A stretch of 63,403 nt of DNA, filler included, from Octopus bimaculoides (GCF_001194135.2; 8 parts of 6 records of this genome joined end to end with filler, not necessarily neighbours in it); one strand, 5' to 3'; positions 7,083-22,525 are shown, counted from the whole stretch's first letter. The notes: generated from the letters alone by a model not told the origin. Program-made: numbers and translations.

Positions 7083-8780
7083 AACTAGTCACAACATCCT
7101 CACGAAGTATAGAAATGGAGTTCGGACAAGATAAATGCTCATACGTGATAGTCAACCGAGGAAAGACTGCCGACCAGGCAGCGAAAATTTTTTTTTTCTT
7201 TCACACGGAGTTCCGGACCCCAGTTACAAACTCATTTGCATACAACCAATAAGAGCTCAACTAACAAACTAATGTATGGGCGCATAACAAGTGATGGGCG
7301 ATAAGATAAGGTCACTTGGGTAAGGAATGACCATGCTTCTTTTCCCTTTATCTCTTTTAATAGTGCTTGTTGTTCTTATTAGAGCTGAACGGCACCTTTC
7401 CTTTCACACTTTTCAAACAATACTTCAATGGTCTGCCAGCACCAATGCTGTTTCTGTCACCAGCAACAACCTTTATTAACTTGACAACACGATCAAGGTG
7501 AGCTCTGATTGGATGTATGCAAATGAGTTCATTACTGGGCTCCAGAACTCTCGTGGGAAAAAATTTTGCGACCAGGCAGAGAACATGTATATCAGTGGCT
7601 TACCTATCTCCCCTATCTCTAATGATGAAAGCTACAAGTACCTCGGAATCAATGTGAACCTTGTATGCGTTGGTGCTGAGACTAAAGCCAGAATAACAAA
7701 AGAGTATTTCTGTAGACTCCGGAAAATATGGAGTTCAGCGCTGTCAGCATTTAACGAGATCTTATCTCACAACGCTTTTGCAGTACCAGTGCTAGTGCCA
7801 ACATTTTGGATATTGGACTGGATACTCGATGAGATACGCAGCCTGGACATCAAAACCAGAAAGGTACTGACCACCACTAGCAACTTACACATTAACAGTG
7901 ACACCAATAGGATTTATATGAGACGGAGTGATGACGGTGGAGTCATAAGGTCGGTCCAAACAGCCTTTGAATGTCGTATTGTATCACTCAGACAACACCT
8001 GCTGAACAGTAAAGAAAGAAAGGAGTACACTCCATGCATACTCAAAAGTGGGAGCATCAACATCTTCAGAGTTGGAGAACTACTATGCAAGTACTCTGAG
8101 AATACGGTTGTCCCATGCGGCCCAAAGGAAAGCTGGACTGGCTTACTTAAACAAAAGCTTGGAAGAGAAGCAGGCATCATACCAACAAAAAGCAATGCAT
8201 GAGTATATATCTCGTAAGCTAGGGAGCAACATCAGCATTGATACGAAGAATAGCCTTTCTTGGACCTGTGATAAATGCATTAAACAAAAGCTTGGAAGAG
8301 AAGCAGGCATCATACCAACAAAAAGCAATGCATGAGTATATATCTCGTAAGCTAGGGAGCAACATCAGCATTGATACGAAGAATAGCCTTTCCTGGACCT
8401 GTGATAAATGCATTACATCTCACCAAGAAGGAAATGCCTTCGCTATCCAGGAAGAGGAGATAACTACTAAATTCCTGATAAACAAAAGAGACTAAGATAC
8501 CACCAAACCTCTACGTTGGGATAAAAAATGTCGGGTCTGCTATACCAGTGTGGATGATATTACCCACATCATCAGCACCTGCACCAAAATGTGTACGAGA
8601 GACTACCTGCCCCTGAAGCATGATATAGTTGCAAAGACTATTTAAAATGCTATTCGTAGGAAGGTCTACCCTGATGTATATGTCAAAGGCATGTTAGAAC
8701 CAGCAGGTATTCACACCTTTAAAGACAAGGAATACTGATGGAACACCCAAATAATAACATCAATTCGGTGCAAACATGTG
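7083..8780 (+). mobile_element. Second R4-clade LINE fragment (RT C-terminal half to RLE start), interrupted by a MITE and a 133-bp duplication
   Basis: MEFGQDKC, YKYLGI, NAFAVPVL, RIYMRRSDDGG, CRVCYTSVDDITHIISTCTKM, WNTQI; related to 6235-7082. ORF 7498-8202 derives from it. Confidence 0.85.
7181..7569. mobile_element. Mutator(MULE)-like MITE, ~70-80 bp TIRs, 9-10 bp TSD
   Basis: GACCAGGCA(G) is duplicated at 7172-7180 and 7570-7578; the termini gcgaaaattt... and ...aaattttgc are long inverted repeats; removing it rejoins the R4 RT. Confidence 0.85.
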
Positions 8781-8797
8781 TGTGTGTGTTTAGGGGC

Positions 8798-8986
8798 GTA
8801 TTCTTTTCTACTCTAGGCACGAGGCCCGAAATTTTGGGAGAGGGGTCAGTCGATTAGATCGACCCTAGTTTGCAACTGGTACTTAATTTATCGACCCCGA
8901 AAGGATTCAAGGCAAAGTCGAACTCGGCGGAATTTGAACTCAGAACGTAAAGGCAATGCTGACGTTTCTACTAAGCTCGCCGCCTT
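8798..8986 (-). mobile_element. tRNA-derived SINE (family of 3379-3612)
   Basis: ttcttttctactctaggcacgaggcccgaaatttt...ggaatttgaactcagaacgt...gctcgccgcctt. Confidence 0.75.
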
Positions 8987-9729
8987 ACCAACAACCTAAT
9001 AGCTGAAGGGAGATTACTCGAGACGTACGATTTTTTTTTTCTCTGCGTTTAATTTAAGTTCTCGAGAGAATTCGTGCCAGTTGCCAGCAGAGCAACAAGA
9101 CTTTTGAGTTAAGAGAGTTGCCGGTGTTTGTGAATATGTGGTTGAGTTGGTGTGTTCATTGAACTGTCGATGCATACACCCGTGTGTGTGCATTTATTCA
9201 CAATGCAAAGGAGGTGACGCGAGACTTGCGTTTACGTAGTTACTGACCTGGTTCACAAGATTAGGGAAAAGATTAAAATTCAGGATTAGCTTTCGAATTT
9301 ACACTTCTGACTTAGTGTTTAAAGTATATTAGAAATATATCGTCTGGACTGCCATGTGTGGAATACCATAGGTTTTATTCGTTTACTCTTTCACTTGTTT
9401 CAGTCGTTTGACGGCGACCATGCCACAACGTCACTTTTGCCTTTGTCTCGGAAATCGACCTCAGAGAACTTCTTTTCTTTTTCGTTTTTTTTTTCTTTTA
9501 TTTTTAAAAATTTGTTTTAGTTTTGTTGTTGTTTATCTGTTATGTTGTAGATAGGTAAACCAGTACCGGTTGTCAAGTGTTGAGTAATTGTGAACTAAGT
9601 CAGTAACCACGTAAGCGTAAGTCTCAAGTTACCTCCCTTGCGTCATTTATTTCTTGAATGTCCTCCGTCAATATGGCCATATTCATACGTCCATACATGC
9701 ATGCATGCATGCAACATACATACATACAT

Positions 9730-10037
9730 GAGGCTGACAACATTATAAGACTTGGAAGGCAGCTCCTTGAGCAATGCTCTTTTTCTGACAACCTAGAATA
9801 CATGCCCAAAGAAGCAACGTATCATCAGATGAAAGGATGGGCCTATATGAGCAGAAGACTATACATGGATATATTAGTAGAAAGCTCCGTGATGATAGTA
9901 ACATCAATCATCAGAGCAGTTTATCATGAACAATAGAGCTGCCTAAACCAAGATCTTTTAGGGATCGCCTTGGCGCCAGCCTGAATAACGGAACCAGAGG
10001 TCCTTCAGCCTACTGTTTCGCGGTTCTTGACAAGCCT
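9730..10037 (+). mobile_element. R4-related fragment joined to a retroelement 3' tail, flanked by (CATA)n
   Basis: 9740-9930 is homologous to the HGYISRKL..SW region of the R4 copies; 9930-10037 matches 5905-6030. Confidence 0.6.
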
Positions 10038-10287
10038 TCATATACATACATACATACATATATACTGTAAAAAATCACATGAACGGAAGGTTTGCGCGGA
10101 AGCCTCAAGCTGTATATCGCAGTATAAAAGGTAATATCATCAAGGCAGTAAATGCTCCTCCCTAAGAAGACCTAGAGTCATTCTGGTGGTGGATCTGGAA
10201 TGTAAACAAACAACTCAGGCGCGATGCAGTGTGGTTAAACGACCGAAGAACTGAGTGCTGTGCAAACGCCTCCTGCAAAACATATAA

Positions 10288-10788
10288 ACCGTCGTCCACC
10301 CTAATAAAAATCACGCGAATGGCCTATCTGGACCCTTAACATCTACTTCTTGTCCAACGGTGATGTCCCCATGGATGATGAAAATAAACTTGGTACGCTG
10401 GAAGCGTCTAGCTTGTGACCACACACTGGCGACGTTTTCTCCGTGAAATAGCGGTGATGCAGGATTTTAGCAGCTGTGTACGTGACACGACTGGTCTATT
10501 TAGGAGCAGCACTGCGGTGCTCTCTGTACGAGGGGCCTTGGGACCAAGTGCATGGGCGTCAGACACGCGAACCGTCGTTCACCCGAAAGAAAACCACGCG
10601 AATGGCTTATCTGAACCCTGCATAATGCTCTCAATCTCTACTTCTTGTCCAACGGGGATGTCCCCACGGATGACGAAAGCAGGTTTGGTACGTTTTCTCC
10701 GTGAAATAGCGCTGACGTGGGATTTTGGCAGCTGTATACGTGTCACGGTTGGTCTATTTAGGAGCACTGCGGCCCCCTTTGTACGAGG
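10288..10788. repeat. Diverged two-unit direct repeat (10288-10533 and 10571-10788, offset 283 bp)
   Basis: Shared blocks cacgcgaatggc.tatctg, ctacttcttgtccaacgg.gatgtcccc, ttttctccgtgaaatagcg, ggtctatttaggagca and tgtacgagg; the reverse complement matches 5851-5900. Confidence 0.8.
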
Positions 10789-10859
10789 AAAACCCTATAA
10801 AAAGTGGGAGTAAATATCGTCTGGCTGGTTTATTGTGACTGGCGGACACTCATCTCAGC

Positions 10860-11035
10860 AGTAGAAAATTTCGATAAGTCGATTGCATCGATCCCAGTTT
10901 TTCACTGGTACTTATTTTATCGACCTCAAAAGGATAAAAAGGCAAACTCAGAACGTAAAGCAGGAAGAAAAGCCACTGAACATAACGCCGTAACGATTCT
11001 GCCATCTCGTCGCCTTGCCACCATCAGCGATATTT
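10860..11035 (-). mobile_element. tRNA-derived SINE, decayed (family of 3379-3612)
   Basis: ctggtacttattttatcgacc...aactcagaacgtaaag...acgattctgccatctcgtcgcctt. Confidence 0.65.
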
Positions 11036-11178
11036 ATTTCGAACACAGATGGCAACGAATTTGCTGAAGGACAGAGTCAATAAGATTGACTCTGGTATAT
11101 AACTGATACTTTATTTCAACGACCCTTGAACGATGAGACGAAAGAGATATGAGATGAAAAACTTCGGTGAAATTGACT

Positions 11179-11184
11179 TTTATT
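11179..11184 (-). promoter_or_regulatory. Candidate polyadenylation signal AATAAA of CFAP57 copy A
   Basis: Lies ~150 nt after the stop, in a block conserved with the copy B 3' flank (18159-18164). Confidence 0.45.
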
Positions 11185-11336
11185 AGCAATAACAATATTA
11201 TATGTAAGAAAAAAATTCTTGCTTCACACAGCACGGTTTTTATCACTCAGAGTAAAAACGGACGTATGACAATATGCGATTCGCTTCGTCACATTAAAAT
11301 GGTAAAACTCCAACGATCAACAAATAAATTCCATTT

Positions 11337-14300
11337 TCATTTCTCTCTCTCCATTTTCGAAAGCAGACGACGGCTGTTCTCTTGTCTCCTCAACTGCAAC
11401 TCTGCTGCTAAGTTATTACGTTTGCTGTTCAGGTGTTGATTTTTCTGATTGATGCGTTTGGTGGTGGAGTTCAACGTATATTTCAGTTTGAGTATGGCAT
11501 ATTCGAAATGGTTCCGCTGCCGACCCCATTCGATCTGTAAATTGGGGTCTGAACTGGCGATCTTATCGACATTCTTAACAACATATTTTTCATAAAGAGT
11601 TTTTATGCAGTTCTTCAATTGGTGTGGATCTTGTATTTTAAAAGACATGAGGTTGTTTAAATCGGAGCAGAACCTGTCCCACAAATCTGTCTTTTGCTTT
11701 AGCTTTCTACGTACATCATCCAGCTCTTTAAAGGTGGCTCCTAATTTCATTTTCATTTCTGCTGTATTATAGTCCATTACGAAAAACTGCGTGGTGAAGT
11801 TTTCCAACTGGTTTCGCATACCAGCCATTTGTTTCTTCGTTTTATTGATTTCCGTCTCCCTCTCATCCACAAGCTGTCTGAGTTCGATAATCTTTTCCCA
11901 TTCCAATTTACATTTCAGTTTCGTGACACTTTGATTCATCAGCTTCAGTTCACAGAAACGTTTGTCTTCCTTAGTTAATCCTTGACATTGGAGCTTCACT
12001 TCTTCTCTTAAGATTTCTATGTTTTCCTCTAGATTATTTTTAACAATCTTTAGTCTTTCTAATTCCATCTTTAACTTCCAGCATTCATCTTCGTTTTCTT
12101 TTAATTGGTTGGGGAAAGCAAAGAGTTTCTTCCGCAAAACGTTACGTTCGAATTTTCTTTTAGAATAGGTAGATCTCTCGACATACAAAAGCTTTTCATA
12201 TTTGACTTTTGTGGAGAGGGATTCCATTTCGGCATCCTCTTCACTCAATTTCTCTGATTTTTCGCATTCTTTCCGCAACGTCAATAACTTTTCATCACAC
12301 TCATAAATTTTCTTCTCCAAATATTCGGTTTTCTTTTCATACTTATCTGCCAATTGTGTTTCTAAACTCTCTTGCATTAAATCCAATTTCTCTATCTCTT
12401 GTTCATGTTCATTTTCTAGTTGGATTAATTTCTCTTCAAGATATTTGATCTTTTCACATTCTATCATTAACTTTTTATTAGTAGTACACTCGAGGGATTT
12501 TATTTTTGTACAGTGATCGTTAATAGTTTCTGTCATTTTTTCATCATAACTAGATTTTTCTCTGACTTTTTCACCCTCTAAAATTTTATTTTTGTTTTTC
12601 AAATTTTCAATTACTTGATTATAATTTTCGGATACCTCTTTTACCTTGTCGTTGAAGTACTTGTCTCTGAGGTGCAGTTTATACTCGTTTTTCTTGGAAA
12701 GTTCTTCCACACGGGATTTCAGCTTCGAAATTGAACACATTTTTTCTTCTAACTCATTCACCGGCATTAAAATGTCTTCAGACCAAATGGTACTGTGGCC
12801 AAATTCTGTACTCTGATTCTCAGTATCATCAACCTTCCATATTGCAATCGAAAAATCTCTTGATGTTGAAATTAAGTATCGATCATCAGTCGTAAAAATC
12901 ATGTGTGTAGTTTCGAGACTATGACAAGGATAATTACGCCAGTTTTCACCTCGTATTGGAGGGCACGCCATGCTTCTTATATAACCATCATTAGTTCCTA
13001 CAAATAACATTGTATTGGACCAAGACAGAGCAACTGATGTGTAAAGAAACTCACTCGGTGGAAACGTTCGCAATATATTCGATTTGTGGATTTCGTTCAA
13101 AGAATGATCCGAGCTTACCACATATAGTTTCTTGTTATCAGTGTTAACTGCAACATCGTTACAGGCGCAGGATTTCAAGACACACTCACCGATTCGCTTC
13201 TCGGTTTTTATGTCCCATTCATAAATTGCCCCATCCAAACCGCATGAGATTAGATTATTGTCATCCATACACCAGGAGGTAGCTTGAACTTTACCGTTGT
13301 GACCTTTCAGGTTGGCGAGCATTTCGAAAGTTATCGACGAGTATACCTGTATAAAGTTGTTGTTGACCGCCGCGAACATGTGACCACCTCGACTGAAATT
13401 GCAATGTGTACACCTGCGGATGTTGATATCTTTAAACGGTTTGAAGTCGTCCCTAAGAATATACATGAAACTTAATCTGTCGAAGAAACCTGCCAGAAGA
13501 AATAGTCCCATTGGGTGCATAGATATACTATAGACTTCTTCTGAAAAGTTTTTAGAAAATTCTAAGCTAAACGTTTCGTGGTTCCACAATTTTATGGAAC
13601 CATCGAGGGAGCTTGTTGCAATGAAAGGTTTCCACAAAGAGACACAACATCCAGTGATATGTTTATAATGGAAAGGCTGTACTAAAACATCAAACACGTT
13701 TGATTCACTCTGTTTTGTTTCCGATGGATTAATTTGTGTAGAATACATTTGTTTCATATTGGTGCTAATAACGAGAACCTCCTCCGATGGATCCACCACC
13801 ATCCATTTTATAATTTGGTTACACAGGTCACTGTTTTCCAAAACATCTAACGGAAGCCAAACATTCCTAACAGACTTGTAAGTATGCCAGACTTCATCTC
13901 TTTCAAAAAACTGTACACATTTCTTACCACACGCTGTAATAAATCCTTTAGAATAACTGGTAACAGCCGTTACTCCGCACGACTTGATGGATTCGTCGGA
14001 AATATTCGAATATTGGAATACATTAAAATCAAGTCTTAAATCCGTATCTTCGATAAACAACACTCGGCCACTGCCTGTACCCACCAAAAGACGTTGTTTC
14101 GCATCCCAGCAATAGCATTTGAAATCTTGAGGTACGATCTTAGGAAAATTGAACTGTTTGTTTTTGCTTCCTTCGAAGCGGAACAATTTAAGAAACTTGT
14201 TGCCAAATACATACACGTTGAGATGTGTTTGAGGGTTGAAACTAACGCAATGAAGAATCTCCGGTGCAACAGAAACTGTCACTTTGGTCGAGAGAAGTAG

Positions 14301-14425
14301 TTTCGATCTTTTCCATGACCAGTAAAGTAAGGTTCGTGATGGGTCGTCACATATGGCCACAAGATATCGAGAAGTAGATGAAAAAGACAAACTAACGATC
14401 TTACAATGCAATACTTGACAAACTA
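11337..14425 (-). CDS. CFAP57: CFAP57/WDR65-like protein, copy A; intronless over the visible part, 5' end hidden in the N gap
   Basis: Open ORF of >1024 aa, open up to the gap edge. Motifs recalled from CFAP57: PSEE.L..ST...Q.YS, KPFIATSSLDGSIKLWN, SISMHP.G, GGHMFAAVN.N.IQVY, LKGHNGKV, ECVLKSC, then a coiled coil (ELxxxNEYKLHLRD; WGRQRNHFE). The given start at 14411 is an internal TTG. Confidence 0.92.
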
Positions 14426-15188
14426 NNNNNNNNNNNNNNNNNNNNNNNNNNNNNNNNNNNNNNNNNNNNNNNNNNNNNNNNNNNNNNNNNNNNNNNNNNN
14501 NNNNNNNNNNNNNNNNNNNNNNNNNNNNNNNNNNNNNNNNNNNNNNNNNNNNNNNNNNNNNNNNNNNNNNNNNNNNNNNNNNNNNNNNNNNNNNNNNNNN
14601 NNNNNNNNNNNNNNNNNNNNNNNNNNNNNNNNNNNNNNNNNNNNNNNNNNNNNNNNNNNNNNNNNNNNNNNNNNNNNNNNNNNNNNNNNNNNNNNNNNNN
14701 NNNNNNNNNNNNNNNNNNNNNNNNNNNNNNNNNNNNNNNNNNNNNNNNNNNNNNNNNNNNNNNNNNNNNNNNNNNNNNNNNNNNNNNNNNNNNNNNNNNN
14801 NNNNNNNNNNNNNNNNNNNNNNNNNNNNNNNNNNNNNNNNNNNNNNNNNNNNNNNNNNNNNNNNNNNNNNNNNNNNNNNNNNNNNNNNNNNNNNNNNNNN
14901 NNNNNNNNNNNNNNNNNNNNNNNNNNNNNNNNNNNNNNNNNNNNNNNNNNNNNNNNNNNNNNNNNNNNNNNNNNNNNNNNNNNNNNNNNNNNNNNNNNNN
15001 NNNNNNNNNNNNNNNNNNNNNNNNNNNNNNNNNNNNNNNNNNNNNNNNNNNNNNNNNNNNNNNNNNNNNNNNNNNNNNNNNTTAGAGAAAAAAAACCAAA
15101 GTTCTTTTTTTTAATTGAGTTTTTACCTGTAAATTTGGATTTTTATCCCTAATATAATAATAATAATAATAATTATTATATATATATA

Positions 15189-15345
15189 TTCGACGGGCTT
15201 CTTTCAGCTTCCGTCTACAAAATTCACTCACAAGGCTTTGGTCGGCCCGAGGCTATAGTAGAAGATACTTGCCCAAGGTGAGACTGAACCTAGAACCATG
15301 TAGTTGGGAAGCAAACTTCTTACCGCACATCCACACCTGCGTCTG
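15189..15345 (-). mobile_element. tRNA-derived SINE head (family with the gacggaaactgaaagaagcccgtcg core)
   Basis: Minus strand reads gcggtaagaagtttgcttcccaactacatggttctaggttcagtc...ccttgggcaag...gaagcccgtcg. Confidence 0.7.
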
Positions 15346-15399
<54 letters not shown>

Positions 15400-15579
15400 C
15401 ATGCATGCATGTATGTATGTATAAAGCATTTTGCTCGGCGTGCTAATAATTCTGCCAACTCACTACCTTTAGAAAGAGAATTATTAATATATAAATCCAA
15501 ACAACATATGAAAACTTGGCGGAGGAAAAGAGTGGGTTTCCTAGATCAGTAAGATTAATGATAATCATGTTTGTTGTGC

Positions 15580-17760
15580 ACTGTTGTGAACTAACACTTG
15601 CAGTAAAGATATGAGGGCAAAGAGAAAACCAGAGAGCCGATGTTCGTGGAGGAAGTTACTGGGTGAAGGTTCTTGGTGAGTTTGGACATAACAAAAGTTA
15701 TGAGAAGAGGAGATTTGGGTGTGTAGGTCATGCCTGGACGGAAGTGGCATGACTCCAGCAGCTCTGAGATAGACAAAGCAGAGAAATGAGACAGCGCATG
15801 TGGGCCATAGCCAAGAGAATGTTAGTGGCCTTATGTTTATCAATGGGCTGGTCATTTTTAGGATGGGCTGTCTTTGTGCGTCACAATCAGCAGTAGTGCC
15901 GTCCTAGATGTGAAAACAATGCCCCACTGTTGGCTCCGCCAGAACTTTGTAGAGGATAAATTATTGTTGGAGGTGGTGGGGGAGTGAAGTATCTTTTGGG
16001 TCGTTATGATCTGATTTGAGTTATGTTAATGATGTTTTTTAACCAGATCCTCGGTGATAGTAAAGCCCAACATTTGGAACAGTTTTGAGGTTAGACATGT
16101 GTGGTGTGGTGAAGTTTTCTTAGTCTTATCTTTTCAATAGCATAGAAAACACAAAGTAGAGCTTGCCTTTCCTTGCTGTTGAAAATGGGGTCAATGACGG
16201 TTCGACTTATGGCATCTAGTTTGTGAGTGGATGACGCATGTTTTGGAGAAGGTTAAGGAAGAACGAAATGTAATGCCATCTCCGAAAAGGGTGAACATTG
16301 TTAGACGTGCCGATACAGGAGATAGAAAATGGCGTTGTGGGGCGCGAGAGGGGCAAAAGTATTGCACTGGGGTACGCCGAAGTTGATAGAGTGAAGGTTA
16401 GAAAGGACTTCGTTAATACACGTTGCGATAGGGTGAGCTGATAGAGAAAGGACTTCGTTAATACACGTTGCGATAGGGTGAGCTGATAGGGAGCTACCGG
16501 TCTAAGAGATGAATGACGAGCGGAGCCCATAGGTGGGAAGTTTCGAAAGATTTGCTTGCTAAATAATGAGGAAAACTTTGCTGATGCCGAAATCAACAAT
16601 GTAGCCTTCGCCAAAGTTCTTCAAGATATAGCCTTCGCCAAAGTTCTTCAAGATATAGGAGAGCAAGTGACTAGCGGGTCTGTCTTCACGGAAGCCGTTG
16701 TGGTGATTGTTCAGAAGGGATGGAAATTCAAGGTTTGGGGGCCGGTGTTGTTCTGGGCAACAGTACCATCCTCCAGGGTGATTCAGAGAGTGGTCTTGCA
16801 TGAGCTACGCCCCTGGATAAAAGACGTCCGGATTTCTGAGGGTGGGTTTTCTTCTGCTGCTGATGTAAGGCTTGCTTCTCGTTTAAACCGCTTCAGCACA
16901 ACTCTGAGTGTATAGATTCGAGGTCTTGAGACATTGCGATTTTGTTGTATTCGAGATGTCAAGGGACAAACCTAAAAGGGAGTTTGTAACTTAGCTGATG
17001 GGTGGTCAGCAGGAATGATATATGAGCTCATTCGGAGGTCTTGTATTGTCGTTGGATGCGAATGTTGGAGACGTTGTGTATGTTATGTCTAAATGTGATC
17101 CTTAGTTACAATGAAGCAATGGTCAGACGACGCAGTAGGTGCCGAGACAGTTGCAGTTCGGTAGAGATTAGGTTTAGCAGTGAGGAAAGAGATCAAGAGC
17201 GTTTGGCGTATGTGTGTGTTGATCTGCGATACAAGTTGGAGATGAGACAAATTGATGCAATGAGTTGAAGATTGCAAAGGATTCGGTTTCTGCACCAATG
17301 ACATCACCGTGAGATGAATGAGACAACCATGAGATGTGAGTGTTGAAGCCACCAAAGACGATGACTTTGAGGATGGGTGAAATAAGATTTATGTCCCTAA
17401 TGCAAGACTTGATTTGGTTGAAGGTCTAGTTGGTAGTCTGCGAAGTTCGGAAAACGCTAGAAGGACGAAATGCATTTGGGTGAGTGAAAGAGGTAGACTG
17501 CGAGTCAAAGTAACTTGATGGCGTTCATATTTGAATCTACGAGAGAGAGAGATAAGTAAGAGGGAGAACGGAGTCTATGTAATCATAGACACCATCTTTC
17601 GTGGTGAAGTTAAAATTAAAAAATATAGCCCGGACAGCTGAGATGGGTTGGAGACGGAGATACAGAGTGTTCTGGATTTCGGAGAGGAATACGATATTTG
17701 ATTTTCGAGTAAGTATTGATGAATTGATTTAAGTTGAGACGAAATTCAAAGATATTGGAG
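15580..17760 (-). mobile_element. Decayed CR1/L2-like LINE (RT region)
   Basis: Minus-strand fragments LLNNHHNGFREDR, INFGVPQCNTFAPL (GVPQG), LFGDGITF (FADD) and LGFTITEDL; many stops. Confidence 0.7.
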
Positions 17761-18158
17761 AACAGGAGATAAAATTGCAGAAATGGAATTGGTGTAAAGA
17801 GATATTTATGAATGTCCCAGTGACATCAGTGATTAATTTAACCTCAGTACTTTACTGATGTTATATTTTATCGAGCCTGGAATATAAGAAAGACAAGGTT
17901 GATTTCGGCAAGATTTGAACTCAAAGTTAAGGTAACACAACCAAATCTGCAAGGCATTTCGTTTAAATGTTTACTGAATCTGCCAATCCACCGTGCCCAT
18001 TACCATTTGTGGTGACATCTATTTTTGAAATAAGGAAAGTGTACCAAAGAGTAAAGTCAATGACACTGACTTCGGTATTTGAGTGGTACTTTATTTCATC
18101 GACTCCTGAACGATGAGATGAAATATAAATGAAATGAAAGACTTTCGATGAAGTTGAC

Positions 18159-18164
18159 TTTATT
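18159..18164 (-). promoter_or_regulatory. Candidate polyadenylation signal AATAAA of CFAP57 copy B
   Basis: Homologous to 11179-11184 (gctAATAAAagtcaa context in both copies). Confidence 0.45.
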
Positions 18165-18349
18165 AGCAATAACAATATTATAAAAAAAAAGAATTCTTGC
18201 TTCACAGCATGGTTTTTATCACTCAATGTAAAAACGGACATGTGACAATACACGAATCGTTTCGTTTCATTTCGTTCGCATGATTAAAATCCAACGATCA
18301 ACAAATAACATCCATTTTCATTTCTCTCACTCCATTTAAAAGACCCCCC

Positions 18350-18640
18350 CCCCACCAAAGAAAAAAATTTCTTTTCTCTCTCTAATATTCCTTGCATCTT
18401 ATTGCTTTTGGTTGCTAGCTGACAATTCAACAGAGAGGCCTTTTAAGACAGTAAAAGACGGTTCTTTTCCCTCTCCAGCGAAAACTTTCCTTGAATTTTA
18501 TTGCTTTCGGCTGTTAGCAGACAATTCTACTGAGAGGCTTTTCAAGGCAGCAAAAAACGGTTCTTTTCTCTCACCAACGACAACTTTTCTCGAATTATAT
18601 TGCTTCTGGTTGTAAGCACACAATTCTGTAGAGTGACCTT
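18350..18640 (-). repeat. 99-bp tandem repeat (~2.9 units) of the CFAP57-B terminal coding segment
   Basis: Units are 18542-18640, 18443-18541 and a partial ~18360-18442; the plus-strand pseudo-ORF 18412-18615 shows the 33-codon period. Confidence 0.9.
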
Positions 18641-21600
18641 TTCCACAGTGTCCTTTGTTATAATCTTCAGTTTGTGTACCATGTATTCGAAATTATAACG
18701 CTGCCGATTCCATTTCTTATGTATGCTGACGTTTCTGTTTTTGTATGATGCGATGATCTTCTTGATATTCTTCTGGTTGTATTTTTCATAAAGAGCTTTG
18801 ATGCTGCCCTTCAGTTTCTGATGATCATCTATGAAAGATATGCAGTCTACAAGGTCGGAGTAGAACGTGTATAACAAGGCCGATTTTCGGTCCAGTCTTG
18901 TACGTACTCTGTCCAGTTCTCGAGAGGTAGCCACTAGTTTCTGTTTCGTTTCCTTTGTCGAGCAGTCCCTATTGGTTAACTGATTTGTTAATTTCTCCTG
19001 TTGACGTTGCATAATCTTCATTTCCACCCTCATGGTATTGATTTCATCTTCCCTCTCTTGTAAACACTGTCTCAATTCGATAATATGTTTAAAATCCAGG
19101 TCAGTTTTCAATTTCATGGTTTCCATGTTCTTCTGCACCAAATCATAGAAATGTTTCCCTTCACCTCGTGGCTTTTCCTCTCGAATATGCAGAACTTCCC
19201 CTAAATGCTTTATCCAATCCTCCTTCCTATTTATGATAATCTTCAATCTCTCAATCCCCAGTTTGTAATTGTTACATTCTTCATCACTTGCTTTTAGTTT
19301 TGTGGAGAATTTTAAGACCTTTTTCTTCAAAACACTATTTTCGTGTTTTAGTTCAGAAGTAAAATCTCTTTCTTGAAACAATAGTTGTTCGAAATTAGTT
19401 TTTCTAGAAACGAGCTCCATTTCGGCATCAACTTCGATCCGTTTCTGCATTTCCTCACATTCTTTCTGCTGCAGTAAAATATTTTCAGTGCACTGTTCCA
19501 TTTTCTTCTCTAAATCTACAAGCTTCTTTTCGTACTCTTCTATCAACTGGTCGAATAGAATTTCTTGCTTTTCTTCCAGTTCTTTTATCTCTTGTTTGTT
19601 TTTCTCTTGTACTACTATTAACATGTTTTCAAGATTCTTACAATTTTCGTCTTCTTCTAGTAACTTCTTATCGGTAACAGATTCGATTAATTGCAACTCT
19701 TGGCTGTGATTTTCGTTAATATGTGATATTTCTTCAATGCATTCCGCTTCTTGTTTGCTTTTATCCTTCTCTAGAATTTCATTTTTGACTTTCAAAATTT
19801 CAATTTTTTGATTATTTTCGGATATCTCATTTATTTTGTTGTAGTTCATAGTTTTAAGGCGCATTTTGTATTCCATTTCGTTTTCAAGTTCTTCAATGTG
19901 GATTTTCAACTTTGAAATTAAACAATTTCTTTTTTCCACATCAGATTTTGGAATTAAAATCTCGTTAGGATAAACGGTACCCTGGTCGCTTTTCAAATTC
20001 TCATCTTCAGCATTATTAACCTTCCATATTGCAATTGAAGCATCTCTTGATGTTGAAATTAAGTATCGATCATCAGTCGTAAAAATCATGTGCGTTGTTT
20101 CAAGACTATGACAAGGATAATTACACCATTTTCCACCTCGTATTGGAGGGCACGCCATGCTTCTTATATAACCATCATTAGTTCCTACAAATAACATTGT
20201 ATTGGACCAAGACAGAGCAACTGATGTGTAAAGAAATTTTCTCGATAGAAACGTTTGCAATATATTCGATTTGTGGATTTCGTTCAAAGAACGATCCGAG
20301 CTTACCACATATAGTTTCTTGTTATCAGTGTTAACTGCAACATCGTTACAGGCGCAGGATTTCAAGACACACTCACCGATTCGCTTCTCGGTTTTTATTT
20401 CCCATTCATAAACTGCCCCATCCAAACCGCATGAGATTAGATTATTGTCATCCATACACCAGGCGGTAGCTTGAACTTTACCGTTGTGACCTTTCAGGTT
20501 GGCCAGCATTTCGAAAGTTATCGACGAGTATACCTGTATAAAGTTGTTGTTGACTGCCGCGAACATGTGGCCACCTCGACTGAAATTGCAATGTGTACAC
20601 CTGCGGATGTTGATATCTCTAAACAGTTTGAAGTCGTCCCTAAGAATATACATGAAACGTAATTCGTCGCTGAAACCTGCCAGAAGAAATAGTCCCATTG
20701 GGTGCATAGATATGCTGTATACTTCTTCTGAAAAGTTTTTAGAAAATTCTAAGTTAAACGTTTCGCGGTTCCACACTTTTATGGAACCGTCGAGGGAGCT
20801 GGTTGCAATGAAAGGTTTCCACAAAGAGACACAACATCCAGTGATATGTTTATAATGGAAAGGCTGTACTAAAACATCAAACACATTTGATTCAGTCTTA
20901 TTTTTTGTTTCCGGTGGATTAACTTGTGTAGAATACATTTGTTTCATATTGGTGCTAATAACGAGAACCTCCTCCGATGGATTCACCACCATCCATTTTA
21001 TAATCTGGTCGCATAGTTTGTTATTCTCCAATGTATCTGACGGCAGCAAAACATCCCTAACAAACTTGTAATTATCGTTATCAATGCTTTCAAAAAACTG
21101 TACATATTTTGTACCACACGCAGTAATAAATCCATGAGAATAACTAACAATTGCCGTCACTCCATGCATCCTTGCGGCATCGTTTGGAAGATTCAAATAT
21201 TGGAATACGTTAAAATCAAGTTTTAAATACCTACCTTCAATACATAACACTCGACCACTGCCTGTACCCACCAAAAGACGTTGTTTCGCATCCCAGGAAT
21301 AGCATTTGAAATCTTGAGGTACAATCTTAGGGAAATTGAACTGTTTGTGCTTGTTTCTTACGAAACGGAACAATTTAAGAAGACGATTGCCAAACACATA
21401 CACGTCGAGATGATTAAGAGGGTGAAAGCTCACATGATGAAGAGTCTCTGGTTCTTGTGAAACCGTCACCTTGACCGAAATGGGTTCTTTCATTTCTTCC
21501 CATGACCAGTAAAGTAGGGTTCGTGATGAGTCGTCACATATGGCTACGACACATCGAGAATCAGATGAAAAAGACAAACTAATGATCGAACAAGTGTTTA

Positions 21601-21907
21601 ATTCTTGGCAAAATAAGGTCTTCCTTTTCCGTAACCTGAATAAATCAAAAATATTTACAAATGGTTTCTCGCATTTATAAGCAACAGCTGAAAAGTTACG
21701 ATTCGGACTTAAAGTCATGGCAGTTATTTCACATCCTTTCTCTGATACATTGAGCATCCTCATTGTTTTGTGTTGGGTGTTATAAAAAACACAGTAACAA
21801 CCACATGGATAAAGGATCGTTTGTTCGTCGAAATAAAAAACATTGTTAGAAATATCCGAACTGATTCCAATCAAATATTTTAAAATCGCTTTTGAAGAGA
21901 TAGCCAT
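18542..21907 (-). CDS. CFAP57: CFAP57/WDR65-like cilia/flagella protein, copy B, complete single-exon ORF of 1121 aa
   Basis: N-terminus NNVFYFDEQTILYPCG matches the CFAP57 NNIFYFDEQ.I.FPSG start; WD40 core as in copy A; coiled coil with ENEMEYKMRLKTMNY and WNRQRYNFE; no in-frame stop over 3366 nt. Confidence 0.95.
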   Translation of the reverse strand: MAISSKAILKYLIGISSDISNNVFYFDEQTILYPCGCYCVFYNTQHKTMRMLNVSEKGCEITAMTLSPNRNFSAVAYKCEKPFVNIFDLFRLRKRKTLFCQELNTCSIISLSFSSDSRCVVAICDDSSRTLLYWSWEEMKEPISVKVTVSQEPETLHHVSFHPLNHLDVYVFGNRLLKLFRFVRNKHKQFNFPKIVPQDFKCYSWDAKQRLLVGTGSGRVLCIEGRYLKLDFNVFQYLNLPNDAARMHGVTAIVSYSHGFITACGTKYVQFFESIDNDNYKFVRDVLLPSDTLENNKLCDQIIKWMVVNPSEEVLVISTNMKQMYSTQVNPPETKNKTESNVFDVLVQPFHYKHITGCCVSLWKPFIATSSLDGSIKVWNRETFNLEFSKNFSEEVYSISMHPMGLFLLAGFSDELRFMYILRDDFKLFRDINIRRCTHCNFSRGGHMFAAVNNNFIQVYSSITFEMLANLKGHNGKVQATAWCMDDNNLISCGLDGAVYEWEIKTEKRIGECVLKSCACNDVAVNTDNKKLYVVSSDRSLNEIHKSNILQTFLSRKFLYTSVALSWSNTMLFVGTNDGYIRSMACPPIRGGKWCNYPCHSLETTHMIFTTDDRYLISTSRDASIAIWKVNNAEDENLKSDQGTVYPNEILIPKSDVEKRNCLISKLKIHIEELENEMEYKMRLKTMNYNKINEISENNQKIEILKVKNEILEKDKSKQEAECIEEISHINENHSQELQLIESVTDKKLLEEDENCKNLENMLIVVQEKNKQEIKELEEKQEILFDQLIEEYEKKLVDLEKKMEQCTENILLQQKECEEMQKRIEVDAEMELVSRKTNFEQLLFQERDFTSELKHENSVLKKKVLKFSTKLKASDEECNNYKLGIERLKIIINRKEDWIKHLGEVLHIREEKPRGEGKHFYDLVQKNMETMKLKTDLDFKHIIELRQCLQEREDEINTMRVEMKIMQRQQEKLTNQLTNRDCSTKETKQKLVATSRELDRVRTRLDRKSALLYTFYSDLVDCISFIDDHQKLKGSIKALYEKYNQKNIKKIIASYKNRNVSIHKKWNRQRYNFEYMVHKLKIITKDTVEKVTLQNCVLTTRSNIIREKLSLVREKNRFLLP

Positions 21908-21930
21908 TCGAAAACTTTTCCCTAACTTAC

Positions 21931-21972
21931 CTGATAGCTGTTCCTAGGATGATGTGTTATGGTGATGGCAGT
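21931..21972 (-). other. Candidate 42-nt exon (acceptor cctcgctttcAG, donor CAG|GTAAGT) just upstream of the CFAP57-B ATG
   Basis: AG at 21974-21973 after a pyrimidine tract; perfect donor with GT at 21930-21929; the ATG is 23 nt downstream of the donor. Confidence 0.4.
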
Positions 21973-22525
21973 CTGAAAGCGAGGCTTTAAATAATGCTGG
22001 TCACGTGATCCAAATGACGGCATTTTTATATTTTTTCGTGTCTTTATTCATTCCTTATTTTCTCTACTTTTTTTTTTTTGGTAATTTCGTCATACTACAC
22101 ACACGCACACAAACATACACATATAGAAAGAAACACACAAATATAGAAACACACACGTACACACACATATGCAAACTTGAATGCATTGCAAATGCAACAA
22201 TAAAATCATTGTTAAACGATTCCAAAATAAAATATTTTTGATTTATTCAAGTTCAGAAAAAGAAGACTTTAATTTATCAATAATTATATATTTGTAAGGT
22301 CGTTTGATTGTTTTTCATCTCATTATCGATGTATCATAGCCATAAGCGGCTATCCATCAAAAACTCTTATTTATTGATTATTGGGAGAAAAACAACAACA
22401 ACAACAACAACAACAAAGAACACCATTTTAGCCAAAGTGACGGTTTCCTAAGTATTAGAGACTCTTTTCCATGTTAACTTCTACACCCAGATTTCTCTCC
22501 ACGTTCGTATTCGTGTATCTCAGAT

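What the first reader, a model, noticed from the sequence alone, without database searches (positions are those of the whole stretch)
11337..21907. Tandem pair of intact, intronless, fast-evolving CFAP57 genes
Seen: two long uninterrupted ORFs (3366 nt and >3089 nt) about 7.2 kb apart on the same strand, amid heavily decayed repeats. Known: CFAP57/FAP57 is normally a multi-exon axonemal WD40/coiled-coil protein needed for inner dynein arm assembly. Inference: a retrocopy was duplicated in tandem and both copies were retained, plausibly as sperm-flagellum variants. Both appear to end earlier than the vertebrate protein as I recall it.
Basis: partly seen in the sequence, partly recalled or inferred. 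Interest (0 to 1): 0.75.

Follow-up and report, generated by a model that had tools for sequence, protein, structure and literature searches.

The report
Fast-evolving intronless CFAP57 paralog pair, octopus
The two long ORFs are real neighbouring genes from a five-copy, single-exon CFAP57-like cluster in Octopus bimaculoides; selection keeps both open, yet their amino acids change about as fast as random mutation, and even the octopus's ordinary CFAP57 gene has no introns.

Summary
B (18542-21907, minus strand, 1121 aa) is complete. A (11337-14425, minus strand) stays open up to the assembly gap. Both are full-length CFAP57 homologues (human CFAP57, E 1.6e-196).

- There is no intron-bearing parent. 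The canonical CFAP57 of O. bimaculoides, O. vulgaris and Argonauta is itself single-exon, as is a cuttlefish short copy. Scallop has at least 19 coding exons.
- A and B are two of five short paralogs in a 151-kb cluster, 1.07 Mb from the canonical gene. They share a promoter-like block, so they arose by DNA duplication, not fresh retroposition.
- O. vulgaris has intact, syntenic orthologues of both genes.

Orthologue dN/dS is 0.80 (A) and 0.99 (B), against 0.11 for neighbour P0002 and 0.04 for the canonical gene. Even so, 15-17 stop codons are expected per gene and none is seen, and nearly all indels keep the reading frame.

The beta-propeller half is homogenised by gene conversion (A with B, A with P0005, B with P0002). 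The coiled-coil half diverges freely.

Expression and function are untested. The gap probably hides A's promoter and first ~97 codons.

The parts
18542..21907 (-). Copy B: complete single-exon CFAP57-like gene, 1121 aa (stop at 18542-18544). Residues 1-632 form tandem beta-propellers (about 20012-21907). Residues 654-1119 form a long helical coiled coil (about 18551-19948).
   Evidence: The O. vulgaris orthologue is an intact ORF, 78.6% aa identical.
11337..14425 (-). Copy A: single-exon CFAP57-like gene. It is open from the gap edge to its stop (11337-11339), 1028 readable codons. The first ~97 codons are not in the assembly.
   Evidence: The O. vulgaris orthologue is intact and full-length, 76% aa identical.
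14426..15081 (.). Assembly gap (656 N, estimated length). By collinearity with O. vulgaris it should hold (TA)n/(TG)n microsatellites, A's promoter-like block, its start codon and about 97 codons.
21981..22020 (-). Conserved promoter-like block upstream of B. It has an E-box CACGTG (22002-22007) and a TATA-like TATTTAAA (21986-21993), 79-100 nt before the ATG. The block is shared with the B and A orthologues of O. vulgaris, with P0005 and, more loosely, with P0002. It is absent from the canonical and cuttlefish genes.
   Evidence: promoter function is inferred, not tested
18055..18337 (-). B's 3' flank, probably its 3' UTR. It is homologous to the 3' flanks of all five short paralogs and carries AATAAA at 18159-18164 and 18090-18095.
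11075..11336 (-). A's 3' flank, probably its 3' UTR. It is about 81% identical to B's and carries AATAAA at 11179-11184 and 11110-11115.
18388..18641 (-). A 99-nt tandem repeat (2.6 copies) spanning the end of B's coding sequence. It places B's stop about 210 nt before the ancestral stop position. A 1-nt indel at 18567 relative to O. vulgaris changes the last residues.
14024..14425 (-). Gene-conversion tract in A. It has 0 mismatches to paralog P0005 over 14230-14423 and 8 over 400 nt. P0005 lies 130 kb away on the opposite strand. Similarity fades by about 13850.
   Evidence: Because the tract adjoins the gap, a mis-join is not fully excluded.
12824..13823 (-). Gene-conversion tract in A, shared with B (B 20018-21004, residues about 302-630). 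Nucleotide identity is 93-99% and dS 0.02-0.17, against dS above 1 in the coiled coil.
20018..21004 (-). B's side of the A/B conversion tract (central propeller). Just upstream, about 20918-21211 is 97-99% identical to P0002 in patches.
22231..22374 (+). Inverted fragment of a CFAP57-like coding sequence (residues about 81-133, 44-46% aa identity), 320-470 nt upstream of B. It is probably a rearrangement relic.

Best explanation
A and B are adjacent members of an octopus-specific cluster of five single-exon, C-terminally shortened CFAP57 paralogs. The cluster spans 11.663-11.814 Mb of O. bimaculoides chromosome CM046623.1, 1.07 Mb from the canonical CFAP57, which is also intronless.

Shown here:
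- The ancestral mollusc gene has many exons. Every coleoid copy examined has none. So one old complete intron loss, most simply retrogene replacement, came before the split into canonical and short lineages, which itself came before the octopus-cuttlefish split.
- The short lineage then expanded by DNA-level tandem duplication that carried the promoter along.
- The A/B pair is older than the O. bimaculoides-O. vulgaris split and is intact and syntenic in both species.
- Evolution is modular. The N-terminal double beta-propeller is repeatedly homogenised by gene conversion among cluster members. The ~480-residue coiled coil shows no conversion. Its residues change about as fast as random substitution would change them. 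Selection still keeps its reading frame, length and helix-friendly composition.

Inferred, not shown:
- The proteins are still axonemal CFAP57-type subunits. Their propellers would dock near inner dynein arms and regulatory hubs, and their coiled coil would dimerise and lie along the doublet microtubule.
- The divergent coiled coils may set dimer-partner or site specificity, possibly in sperm flagella under sexual selection.
For: Identity and fold:
- Sequence match to human CFAP57 at E 1.6e-196 over the full length. The model has two propellers plus long helices, and the top fold matches are all CFAP57/FAP57 chains.

Cluster:
- P0002, P0005 and P0004 are single-exon genes on the same chromosome. 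The canonical P0121 is single-exon at 10.59 Mb.

Intron history:
- Single-exon genes: O. vulgaris canonical, Argonauta canonical, cuttlefish-type short copy. Pecten maximus has at least 19 coding exons over 10.4 kb.
- The tree puts all cephalopod copies in one clade (100% bootstrap), with the short clade including the cuttlefish copy (100%).

DNA-level duplication:
- The unit shared among paralogs runs from about -110 nt through the ORF to about +270 nt. It includes a conserved E-box/TATA-like block.

Conservation:
- O. vulgaris has full-length open orthologues of B and A in the same order and spacing.

Rates (Nei-Gojobori estimates):
- Orthologue dN/dS is 0.80 (0.63-1.09) for A, 0.99 (0.77-1.28) for B, 0.11 for P0002 and 0.04 for the canonical gene.

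Selection on the ORF:
- Random placement of the observed substitutions predicts 15-17 stop codons per gene, 9-10.5 of them in the coiled coil alone. None is observed.
- CDS indels occur at 2.1-2.3 per kb and 11 of 14 are multiples of 3; two of the other three are an adjacent, compensating 1+2 pair. Non-coding DNA has 10.1 per kb and 10 of 46 multiples of 3 (Fisher p = 2e-4 and 4e-8).
- Proline changes in the coil are fewer than expected (1 against 6.1 for A), while total amino-acid changes equal the random expectation.

Gene conversion:
- dS is 0.02-0.17 in the central propeller against more than 1 in the coil.
- Nucleotide identity is mosaic along the genes.
- Segment trees disagree, each with 98-100% support.
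- Within-species A/B identity (94.3% and 93.2%) exceeds orthologue identity (89.3% and 90.7%) over residues 301-640.

Literature:
- FAP57 has a WD half, a coiled-coil half and a disordered tail, and spans the 96-nm axonemal repeat (PMC6761771).
- Tetrahymena has four CFAP57 paralogs and uses an A/C heterodimer (PMC10504270).
Against: - No expression or protein evidence was obtainable. None of the five short paralogs has a transcript-assembly (Logan) member in its protein cluster, whereas the canonical gene and the cuttlefish short copy do.
- dN/dS near 1, and amino-acid change equal to random expectation in the coil, are also what a relaxed or dying gene shows.
- Of 353 positions invariant in 14 canonical CFAP57 proteins, A and B keep only about 70% in the propellers and 41-46% in the coil. 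The ancestral axonemal contacts may therefore be lost.
- Public gene models are inconsistent. B is annotated from an internal Met. A carries a non-homologous first exon bridging the gap. The O. vulgaris orthologues are annotated as C-terminal halves only.
- A's 5' end is unread.
- Retroposition cannot be separated from in-place, cDNA-mediated intron loss: no poly(A) tail or target-site duplication survives, and synteny of the canonical locus was not examined.
- The dN/dS figures are pairwise approximations. In the propeller half they are blurred by gene conversion.
Confidence: 0.75

Rival explanations
1. A and B are unexpressed, decaying duplicates (pseudogenes in waiting). Their ORFs are open by chance, or because gene conversion from functional neighbours keeps repairing them.
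For: Orthologue dN/dS of 0.80 and 0.99 cannot be told apart from 1. Coil amino-acid changes equal the random expectation. Many residues that are otherwise invariant are lost. No transcript-assembly members occur in their protein clusters. Conversion from P0002 and P0005 into the propeller half is real.
Against: No stop codons are seen where 15-17 are expected per gene (P about 1e-7 each). The coiled coil shows no conversion, yet has no stops where 9-10.5 are expected (P about 1e-4 to 3e-5 per gene). This holds in both genes. Nearly all CDS indels preserve the frame, and they are five times rarer than in the flanks. Proline is avoided. Full-length ORFs are kept in two species.
Confidence: 0.07
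2. One reading: a recent retrocopy of an intron-containing CFAP57 parent landed here and was then duplicated in tandem.
For: The coding sequences have no introns. The homologous unit among paralogs is roughly transcript-sized, about -110 to +270 nt. CFAP57 has many exons in another mollusc.
Against: The canonical orthologue is itself single-exon in three octopods. No other CFAP57 is annotated in them. A cuttlefish-type short copy is intronless too. The paralogs share a promoter-like block upstream of the likely transcription start. Five copies sit within 151 kb. No poly(A) tract or target-site duplication was found.
Confidence: 0.05
3. The proteins are functional but have taken on a new, non-axonemal role. 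They would keep the propeller-plus-coiled-coil scaffold while losing the CFAP57 docking contacts.
For: A and B have lost about 30% of invariant propeller positions and 54-59% of invariant coil positions. They lack the conserved C-terminal ~95 residues. Their rate is 20-25 times that of the canonical gene.
Against: The closest sequence and fold relatives are all axonemal CFAP57 chains. Extra CFAP57 paralogs in ciliates and kinetoplastids are axonemal (PMC10504270). The slower short paralog P0002 (dN/dS 0.11) and the cuttlefish short copy show that the short lineage has been constrained for a long time.
Confidence: 0.13
4. The stretch of A next to the gap (14230-14425, identical to P0005) is an assembly chimera and not a recent gene conversion.
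For: Identity is perfect exactly at a contig end that borders an estimated gap flanked by microsatellites.
Against: Identity declines gradually (100, 99, 97, 95, 90, 80%) and does not switch abruptly. The O. vulgaris A orthologue, which has no gap, is also 93% identical in DNA to O. bimaculoides P0005 over this stretch, and 88% identical in protein to the O. sinensis P0005 orthologue.
Confidence: 0.1

Closest known systems
Canonical CFAP57 / FAP57 / WDR65 (human 8j07 i4/i5, Chlamydomonas 8glv Cp/Cq)
   Same: The architecture and order are the same: about 630 residues of tandem WD40 beta-propellers, then about 480 residues of coiled coil. Homology is full-length (E 1.6e-196) and these chains are the top fold matches.
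   Different: A and B are paralogs, not the orthologue. The octopus orthologue is P0121, which is 60-62% identical to other molluscs, while B is 36-39% identical to canonical CFAP57 proteins. A and B lack the last ~95 residues. They have changed 30-59% of otherwise invariant positions. Their dN/dS is 0.8-1.0 against 0.04.
Lineage-specific CFAP57 paralog sets: Tetrahymena CFAP57A-D (8tid W/w), trypanosomatid CMF5/CMF6, Chlamydomonas FBB7
   Same: Several CFAP57-type genes occur in one genome. In Tetrahymena two paralogs form the heterodimer that spans the 96-nm repeat (PMC10504270). FBB7 may stand in for FAP57 (PMC6761771). These chains are among the hits for B.
   Different: Those are old, well-diverged paralogs in protists. 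Here the copies form a young animal tandem cluster with concerted evolution in one half and near-neutral-rate divergence in the other. No evidence yet shows that the octopus copies assemble into axonemes.
Retrogene replacement (for example amphioxus SYCP1, PMC5803294)
   Same: A gene with many exons in relatives is represented only by single-exon copies, with no intron-bearing parent left.
   Different: The mechanism is inferred only. No poly(A) or target-site duplication remains, and whether the canonical gene moved to a new locus was not tested. The replacement was followed by a six-member family expansion.
Rapidly evolving tandem gene families with domain-restricted gene conversion (a general pattern in reproductive and immune gene clusters; from general knowledge, not tested here)
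   Same: Tandem paralogs, dN/dS near 1 with preserved ORFs, and a mosaic of conversion tracts.
   Different: Neither tissue of expression nor positive selection has been demonstrated for A or B.

Membership tests
CFAP57/FAP57 protein family | Full-length sequence homology to CFAP57, with CFAP57 as best hit | tested here: met
   Human CFAP57 at E 1.6e-196, covering residues 10-1146. All top database hits are CFAP57 or CFAP57-like.
CFAP57/FAP57 protein family | N-terminal tandem WD40 beta-propellers (about 620 aa) followed by a long coiled coil (about 500 aa) | tested here: met
   The model of B is all-beta over residues 1-632 and has long helices over 654-1119. The best fold matches are CFAP57 chains. 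The domain plan follows PMC6761771.
CFAP57/FAP57 protein family | C-terminal tail beyond the main coiled coil (canonical residues about 1160-1255) | tested here: not met
   A and B end at canonical residues 1156-1162 of 1255, as do all short paralogs.
CFAP57/FAP57 protein family | One-to-one orthology with metazoan CFAP57 | tested here: not met
   The orthologue is P0121/P0072. A and B sit in a separate coleoid 'short' clade.
CFAP57/FAP57 protein family | Retention of residues invariant across canonical orthologues | tested here: inconclusive
   A keeps 71% (propeller) and 46% (coil) of 353 invariant positions. B keeps 70% and 41%. No threshold defines membership.
CFAP57/FAP57 protein family | Axonemal localisation, docking of inner dynein arms g/d, dimerisation along the A-tubule | not testable with these tools
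   This needs proteomics, localisation or cryo-ET.
Retrogene (processed copy) | Intronless coding sequence where the ancestral gene has introns | tested here: met
   A and B are single ORFs. The scallop gene has at least 19 coding exons.
Retrogene (processed copy) | An intron-containing parent gene elsewhere in the genome | tested here: not met
   The canonical gene is single-exon in three octopods. No further CFAP57 is annotated. A whole-genome tBLASTn was not possible.
Retrogene (processed copy) | Poly(A) remnant and target-site duplications at the copy's ends | tested here: inconclusive
   None is seen at the 3' ends of A or B. None would be expected to survive at this age.
Retrogene (processed copy) | The copy lacks the source gene's promoter (applied to A and B as individual copies) | tested here: not met
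   A conserved E-box/TATA-like block lies upstream of B, P0005, P0002 and both O. vulgaris orthologues. The cluster copies therefore arose by DNA duplication.
Concerted evolution by gene conversion | Mosaic similarity, with synonymous divergence dropping sharply within tracts | tested here: met
   dS is 0.02-0.17 in tracts against more than 1 elsewhere. Nucleotide identity is 93-100% in tracts against 50-80% outside.
Concerted evolution by gene conversion | Within-species paralogs more alike than between-species orthologues, and discordant segment trees | tested here: met
   Over residues 301-640, A/B identity is 94.3% (O. bimaculoides) and 93.2% (O. vulgaris), against 89.3% and 90.7% for orthologues. 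The segment trees conflict at 98-100% bootstrap.

The most novel reading that the evidence does not exclude
Octopuses have turned a single axonemal 'ruler' protein into a small diversifying family. Conversion-homogenised propellers would keep docking to dynein and regulatory hubs. Rapidly diverging coiled coils would create alternative homo- or heterodimers, giving sperm-specific or doublet-specific inner-arm docking, with sexual selection driving the coiled-coil divergence. The whole coleoid family would descend from a retrogene that replaced a gene with at least 19 coding exons.
Probability: 0.25. Interest if true: 0.65.

Novelty: new member of a known kind. Interest (0 to 1): 0.42.

Why it matters
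CFAP57 is a conserved, usually single-copy animal gene. Its loss causes ciliary dyskinesia and sperm flagellar defects (PMC7444499, PMC9977434).

In octopus it exists only as single-exon genes. It has spawned a cluster whose members range from well constrained (P0002, dN/dS 0.11) to evolving at the random-substitution rate (A and B) while still being kept open.

This offers a natural experiment on two questions. First, which parts of the 96-nm-repeat scaffold tolerate change: the coiled-coil sequence does, while its length and helicity do not. Second, how gene conversion can hold one domain constant while another runs free.

It also matters for annotation. The public models of A, B and their O. 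vulgaris orthologues are truncated or chimeric.

The phenomena themselves are well known: retrogene replacement, tandem expansion, concerted evolution, fast-evolving paralogs. This is an interesting case, not a new kind of system.

Tried and rejected
- Looked for A's missing N-terminus beyond the gap by tBLASTn in all frames. Nothing was found.
- Looked for poly(A) tails and target-site duplications at the 3' ends. None was found.
- The whole-protein tree placed A, B and P0005 together without resolving their order. I set it aside because gene conversion confounds it, and used segment trees instead.
- A homologue search with A's coiled-coil half was saturated by low-complexity word matches and returned only one hit. 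That hit was the useful O. vulgaris A orthologue.
- The look-up of the Pomacea gene was not on record. Pecten was used instead.
- Considered claiming positive selection. The coil diverges about twice as fast as the flanking non-coding DNA (13.5-14% against 7.5%, p about 1e-11 to 1e-13). However, dS in the coil and in neighbour P0002 (0.13-0.17) is also above the non-coding value, and the canonical gene's flanks differ by about 13%. So I claim only dN/dS of about 1.
- Rfam and tRNA scans of the piece found nothing.
- The 234-aa ORF at 7498-8202 gave no significant PDB match, so its retroelement nature is unverified.
- Literature searches for CFAP57/WDR65 together with octopus or cephalopod found no papers.
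- Expression could not be tested with the tools available.


Full report
**Observation.** The piece carries two long minus-strand ORFs. B runs 18542-21907 (3366 nt, ATG to stop, 1121 aa). A is listed as 11337-14411, but its frame stays open through 14423 to the gap edge at 14425, giving 1028 readable codons. The stops are 7205 nt apart. The products are 62% identical and the DNA 77% identical. B matches human CFAP57 (8j07_i4) at E 1.6e-196 over residues 10-1146 of 1250. A model built on a 25-sequence alignment is all-beta over residues 1-632 and long helices over 654-1119. Its best fold matches are the CFAP57/FAP57 chains of human, Chlamydomonas, bovine sperm, Tetrahymena, Trypanosoma and Leishmania axonemes.

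**The gap.** A's first readable codon aligns to B residue 98-100. No sequence homologous to residues 1-97 lies beyond the gap in any frame. The public model of A (P0003, 1085 aa) bridges the gap with a 64-residue N-terminus that has no CFAP57 homology. In O. vulgaris the orthologous interval has no gap. After a shared repeat element (O. bimaculoides L002 12128 = O. vulgaris L009 7914) come (TA)n, (TG)n, the promoter-like block, a start codon and the ~97 missing codons. That interval is 570 nt, against 96 nt plus 656 N here. A's 5' end is therefore probably inside the gap, and the microsatellites explain why assembly failed there. This is inference, not proof.

**Source and gene family.** The window is Octopus bimaculoides chromosome CM046623.1 (GCA_001194135.2); locus L002 contains the piece exactly. 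Five short CFAP57-like genes lie within 151 kb:
- A at 11,663,037-11,666,125 (minus strand)
- B at 11,670,242-11,673,607 (minus strand)
- P0002 at 11,686,000-11,689,377 (minus strand)
- P0005 at 11,795,212-11,798,580 (plus strand)
- P0004 at 11,810,727-11,814,098 (plus strand)

All are single exons. The canonical 1255-aa CFAP57 (P0121) lies at 10,587,602-10,591,369, 1.07 Mb away, and is also a single exon. It is 60-62% identical to other mollusc CFAP57 proteins, whereas B is 36-39% identical to canonical CFAP57 proteins.

**Intron history.** The canonical genes of O. vulgaris and Argonauta hians are single-exon. So is a 1093-aa short copy that clusters at 90% or more with Acanthosepion pharaonis. 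Pecten maximus CFAP57 spans 10.4 kb with at least 19 coding exons. No other CFAP57 appears among annotated octopod proteins. In the tree all cephalopod copies form one clade (100% bootstrap). That clade splits into a canonical clade and a short clade, and the short clade includes the cuttlefish copy (100%). The simplest history is one complete intron loss before the canonical/short duplication, which itself predates the octopod-decapod split. In other words, a retrogene replaced its parent. I could not separate retroposition from in-place cDNA-mediated intron loss.

**How the pair arose.** Homology among the five short genes covers about -110 nt, the ORF and about +270 nt. The upstream part contains a conserved block, GGATCACGTGAC...TATTTAAAGCCTCG, with an E-box at 22002-22007 and a TATA-like element at 21986-21993. 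The block is shared by B, both O. vulgaris orthologues, P0005 and, more loosely, P0002. It is absent from the canonical and cuttlefish genes. Copies that carry a promoter arise by DNA duplication. The 3' flanks share two AATAAA signals. Intergenic DNA beyond these limits is unalignable, as expected for coil dS near 1.

**Conservation in a second species.** O. vulgaris (OX597836.1) has full-length open reading frames orthologous to B (L009 747-4151) and A (about 8174-11569). They are in the same order and spacing, within a collinear alignment that runs through the intergenic DNA. Only the C-terminal halves are annotated there (532 and 522 aa). In coil-only trees the topology is (B,(A,(P0005 orthologues))) with 98-100% support. 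A and B therefore predate the species split.

**Rates.** Nei-Gojobori orthologue comparisons give the following:

| Gene | dN/dS | 95% interval |
|---|---|---|
| A | 0.80 | 0.63-1.09 |
| B | 0.99 | 0.77-1.28 |
| P0002 | 0.11 | 0.07-0.16 |
| Canonical | 0.04 | 0.02-0.06 |

In the coil, amino-acid differences equal what random placement of the observed substitutions gives: 139 against 139.7 for A, and 136 against 133 for B. A and B keep only about 70% (propeller) and 41-46% (coil) of the 353 positions invariant in 14 canonical CFAP57 proteins.

**The ORFs are nonetheless selected.** The same simulation predicts 15-17 stop codons per gene, 9-10.5 of them in the coil alone. None is seen. Between the two species, CDS indels occur at 2.1-2.3 per kb and 11 of 14 are multiples of three. 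Of the other three, two are an adjacent compensating 1+2 pair. The third is a 1-nt indel eight codons before B's stop. Non-coding DNA has 10.1 indels per kb, and 10 of 46 are multiples of three (p = 2e-4 and 4e-8). Proline changes in the coil are rarer than expected, and the coil stays 50-53% E/K/Q/L/R. Selection thus preserves frame, length and helical character, but hardly any specific residue.

**Modular evolution.** Synonymous divergence between A and B is 0.02-0.17 over residues 345-640 but above 1 over residues 715-1014. Nucleotide windows show three tracts:
- A is 97-100% identical to P0005 next to the gap (no mismatch over 14230-14423).
- A is 93-99% identical to B over residues 302-630.
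- B is 97-99% identical to P0002 in patches over residues 233-330.

The coil is 50-80% identical to every paralog. Segment trees conflict at 98-100% support. Over residues 301-640, within-species A/B identity (94.3% and 93.2%) exceeds orthologue identity (89.3% and 90.7%). This is concerted evolution by gene conversion in the propeller half, acting independently in both lineages, with none in the coil. Because the stretch identical to P0005 touches the gap, a local mis-join is not excluded. However, the decline in identity is gradual, and the gap-free O. vulgaris A orthologue is also P0005-like over this stretch: 93% DNA identity to O. bimaculoides P0005, and 88% protein identity to the O. sinensis P0005 orthologue.

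**C-terminus.** All short paralogs stop at canonical residues 1156-1162 of 1255. They lack the tail that in Chlamydomonas FAP57 is variable and low-complexity (PMC6761771). In B a 99-nt tandem repeat (18388-18641) spans the end of the gene and puts its stop about 210 nt before the ancestral stop position.

**Mechanism (inferred).** CFAP57 lies as a dimer along the A-tubule and spans the 96-nm repeat. It stabilises inner dynein arms g and d and contacts N-DRC-associated proteins. Tetrahymena uses a heterodimer of two of its four paralogs (PMC6761771, PMC10504270). The octopus short paralogs most likely still act as axonemal scaffold subunits. Their propellers are held similar by conversion, and their coiled coils are free to change partner or site specificity. 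A sperm role under sexual selection is plausible but untested. None of the short paralogs has a transcript-assembly member in its protein cluster, unlike the canonical gene. That is weak negative evidence.

**Verdict.** This is a real and fairly interesting gene pair: two members of a lineage-specific CFAP57 expansion descended from an ancient intronless ancestor. Its evolution combines dN/dS near 1, strong preservation of the ORF, and gene conversion restricted to one domain. The literature searches found no paper on it, but each component phenomenon is well known.

Noticed in passing
window 22231-22374 (+ strand): An inverted fragment of CFAP57-like coding sequence (residues about 81-133, 44-46% aa identity, 75% nucleotide identity to P0002) lies 320-470 nt upstream of B's ATG. 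It is probably a relic of a partial inverted duplication.
   Followed up: partly
window 18388-18641: A 99-nt tandem repeat (2.6 copies, 80% matches) spans B's stop codon. B's last residues are encoded by the repeat, and a 1-nt indel at 18567 gives O. bimaculoides and O. vulgaris different C-terminal tails.
   Followed up: yes
L002 10001-15968 (= window 17304-11337), L002 5812-8763, L009 2553-4151 and 10001-11569: The public gene models look wrong. A (P0003) has a non-homologous 64-aa first exon spliced across the gap. B (P0001, 983 aa) starts at internal Met139. The O. vulgaris orthologues are annotated only as C-terminal halves (532 and 522 aa), although the full ~1130-aa ORFs are open.
   Followed up: yes
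window 21925-21945: A canonical-looking splice donor, ATCAG|GTAAGT, lies 25 nt upstream of B's ATG. It is conserved in B of both species and, in weaker form (GTATGT, GTACGT), in the O. vulgaris A orthologue and P0005. The ATG is too close for a normal intron, and its meaning is unknown.
   Followed up: partly
window 7498-8495: A 234-aa ORF, followed by a 99%-identical 133-nt tandem duplication (8147-8415). It looks like a decayed mobile-element remnant, but it gave no significant PDB match.
   Followed up: partly
window 15177-15339, 8802-8955 and 25659-25942: Interspersed repeat copies (SINE-like) recur near the other CFAP57 paralogs and the canonical gene. One copy (25659-25942) is 97.5% identical to a copy in L003. 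The copy at 15177-15339 is orthologous in O. vulgaris.
   Followed up: partly
window 15350-17850: The B-A intergenic DNA has a strong G-over-C strand skew (+0.3). It also holds two perfect short tandem duplications: 45 nt x2 at 16400-16489 and 27 nt x2 at 16602-16658. The region aligns with O. vulgaris as part of the collinear non-coding DNA, which is 92.5% identical overall. The cause of the skew is unexplained.
   Followed up: no
L004 1-2446: A tubulin-tyrosine-ligase-domain (TTL) gene lies about 7.5 kb upstream of paralog P0005. It is another cilium/tubulin-related gene next to the cluster, possibly by coincidence.
   Followed up: no
L009 8174-8197 (O. vulgaris A orthologue): The ancestral start codon position reads CAG (Gln), and an in-frame ATG six codons upstream appears to serve as the start. 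This is a start-codon shift in an otherwise intact ORF.
   Followed up: partly
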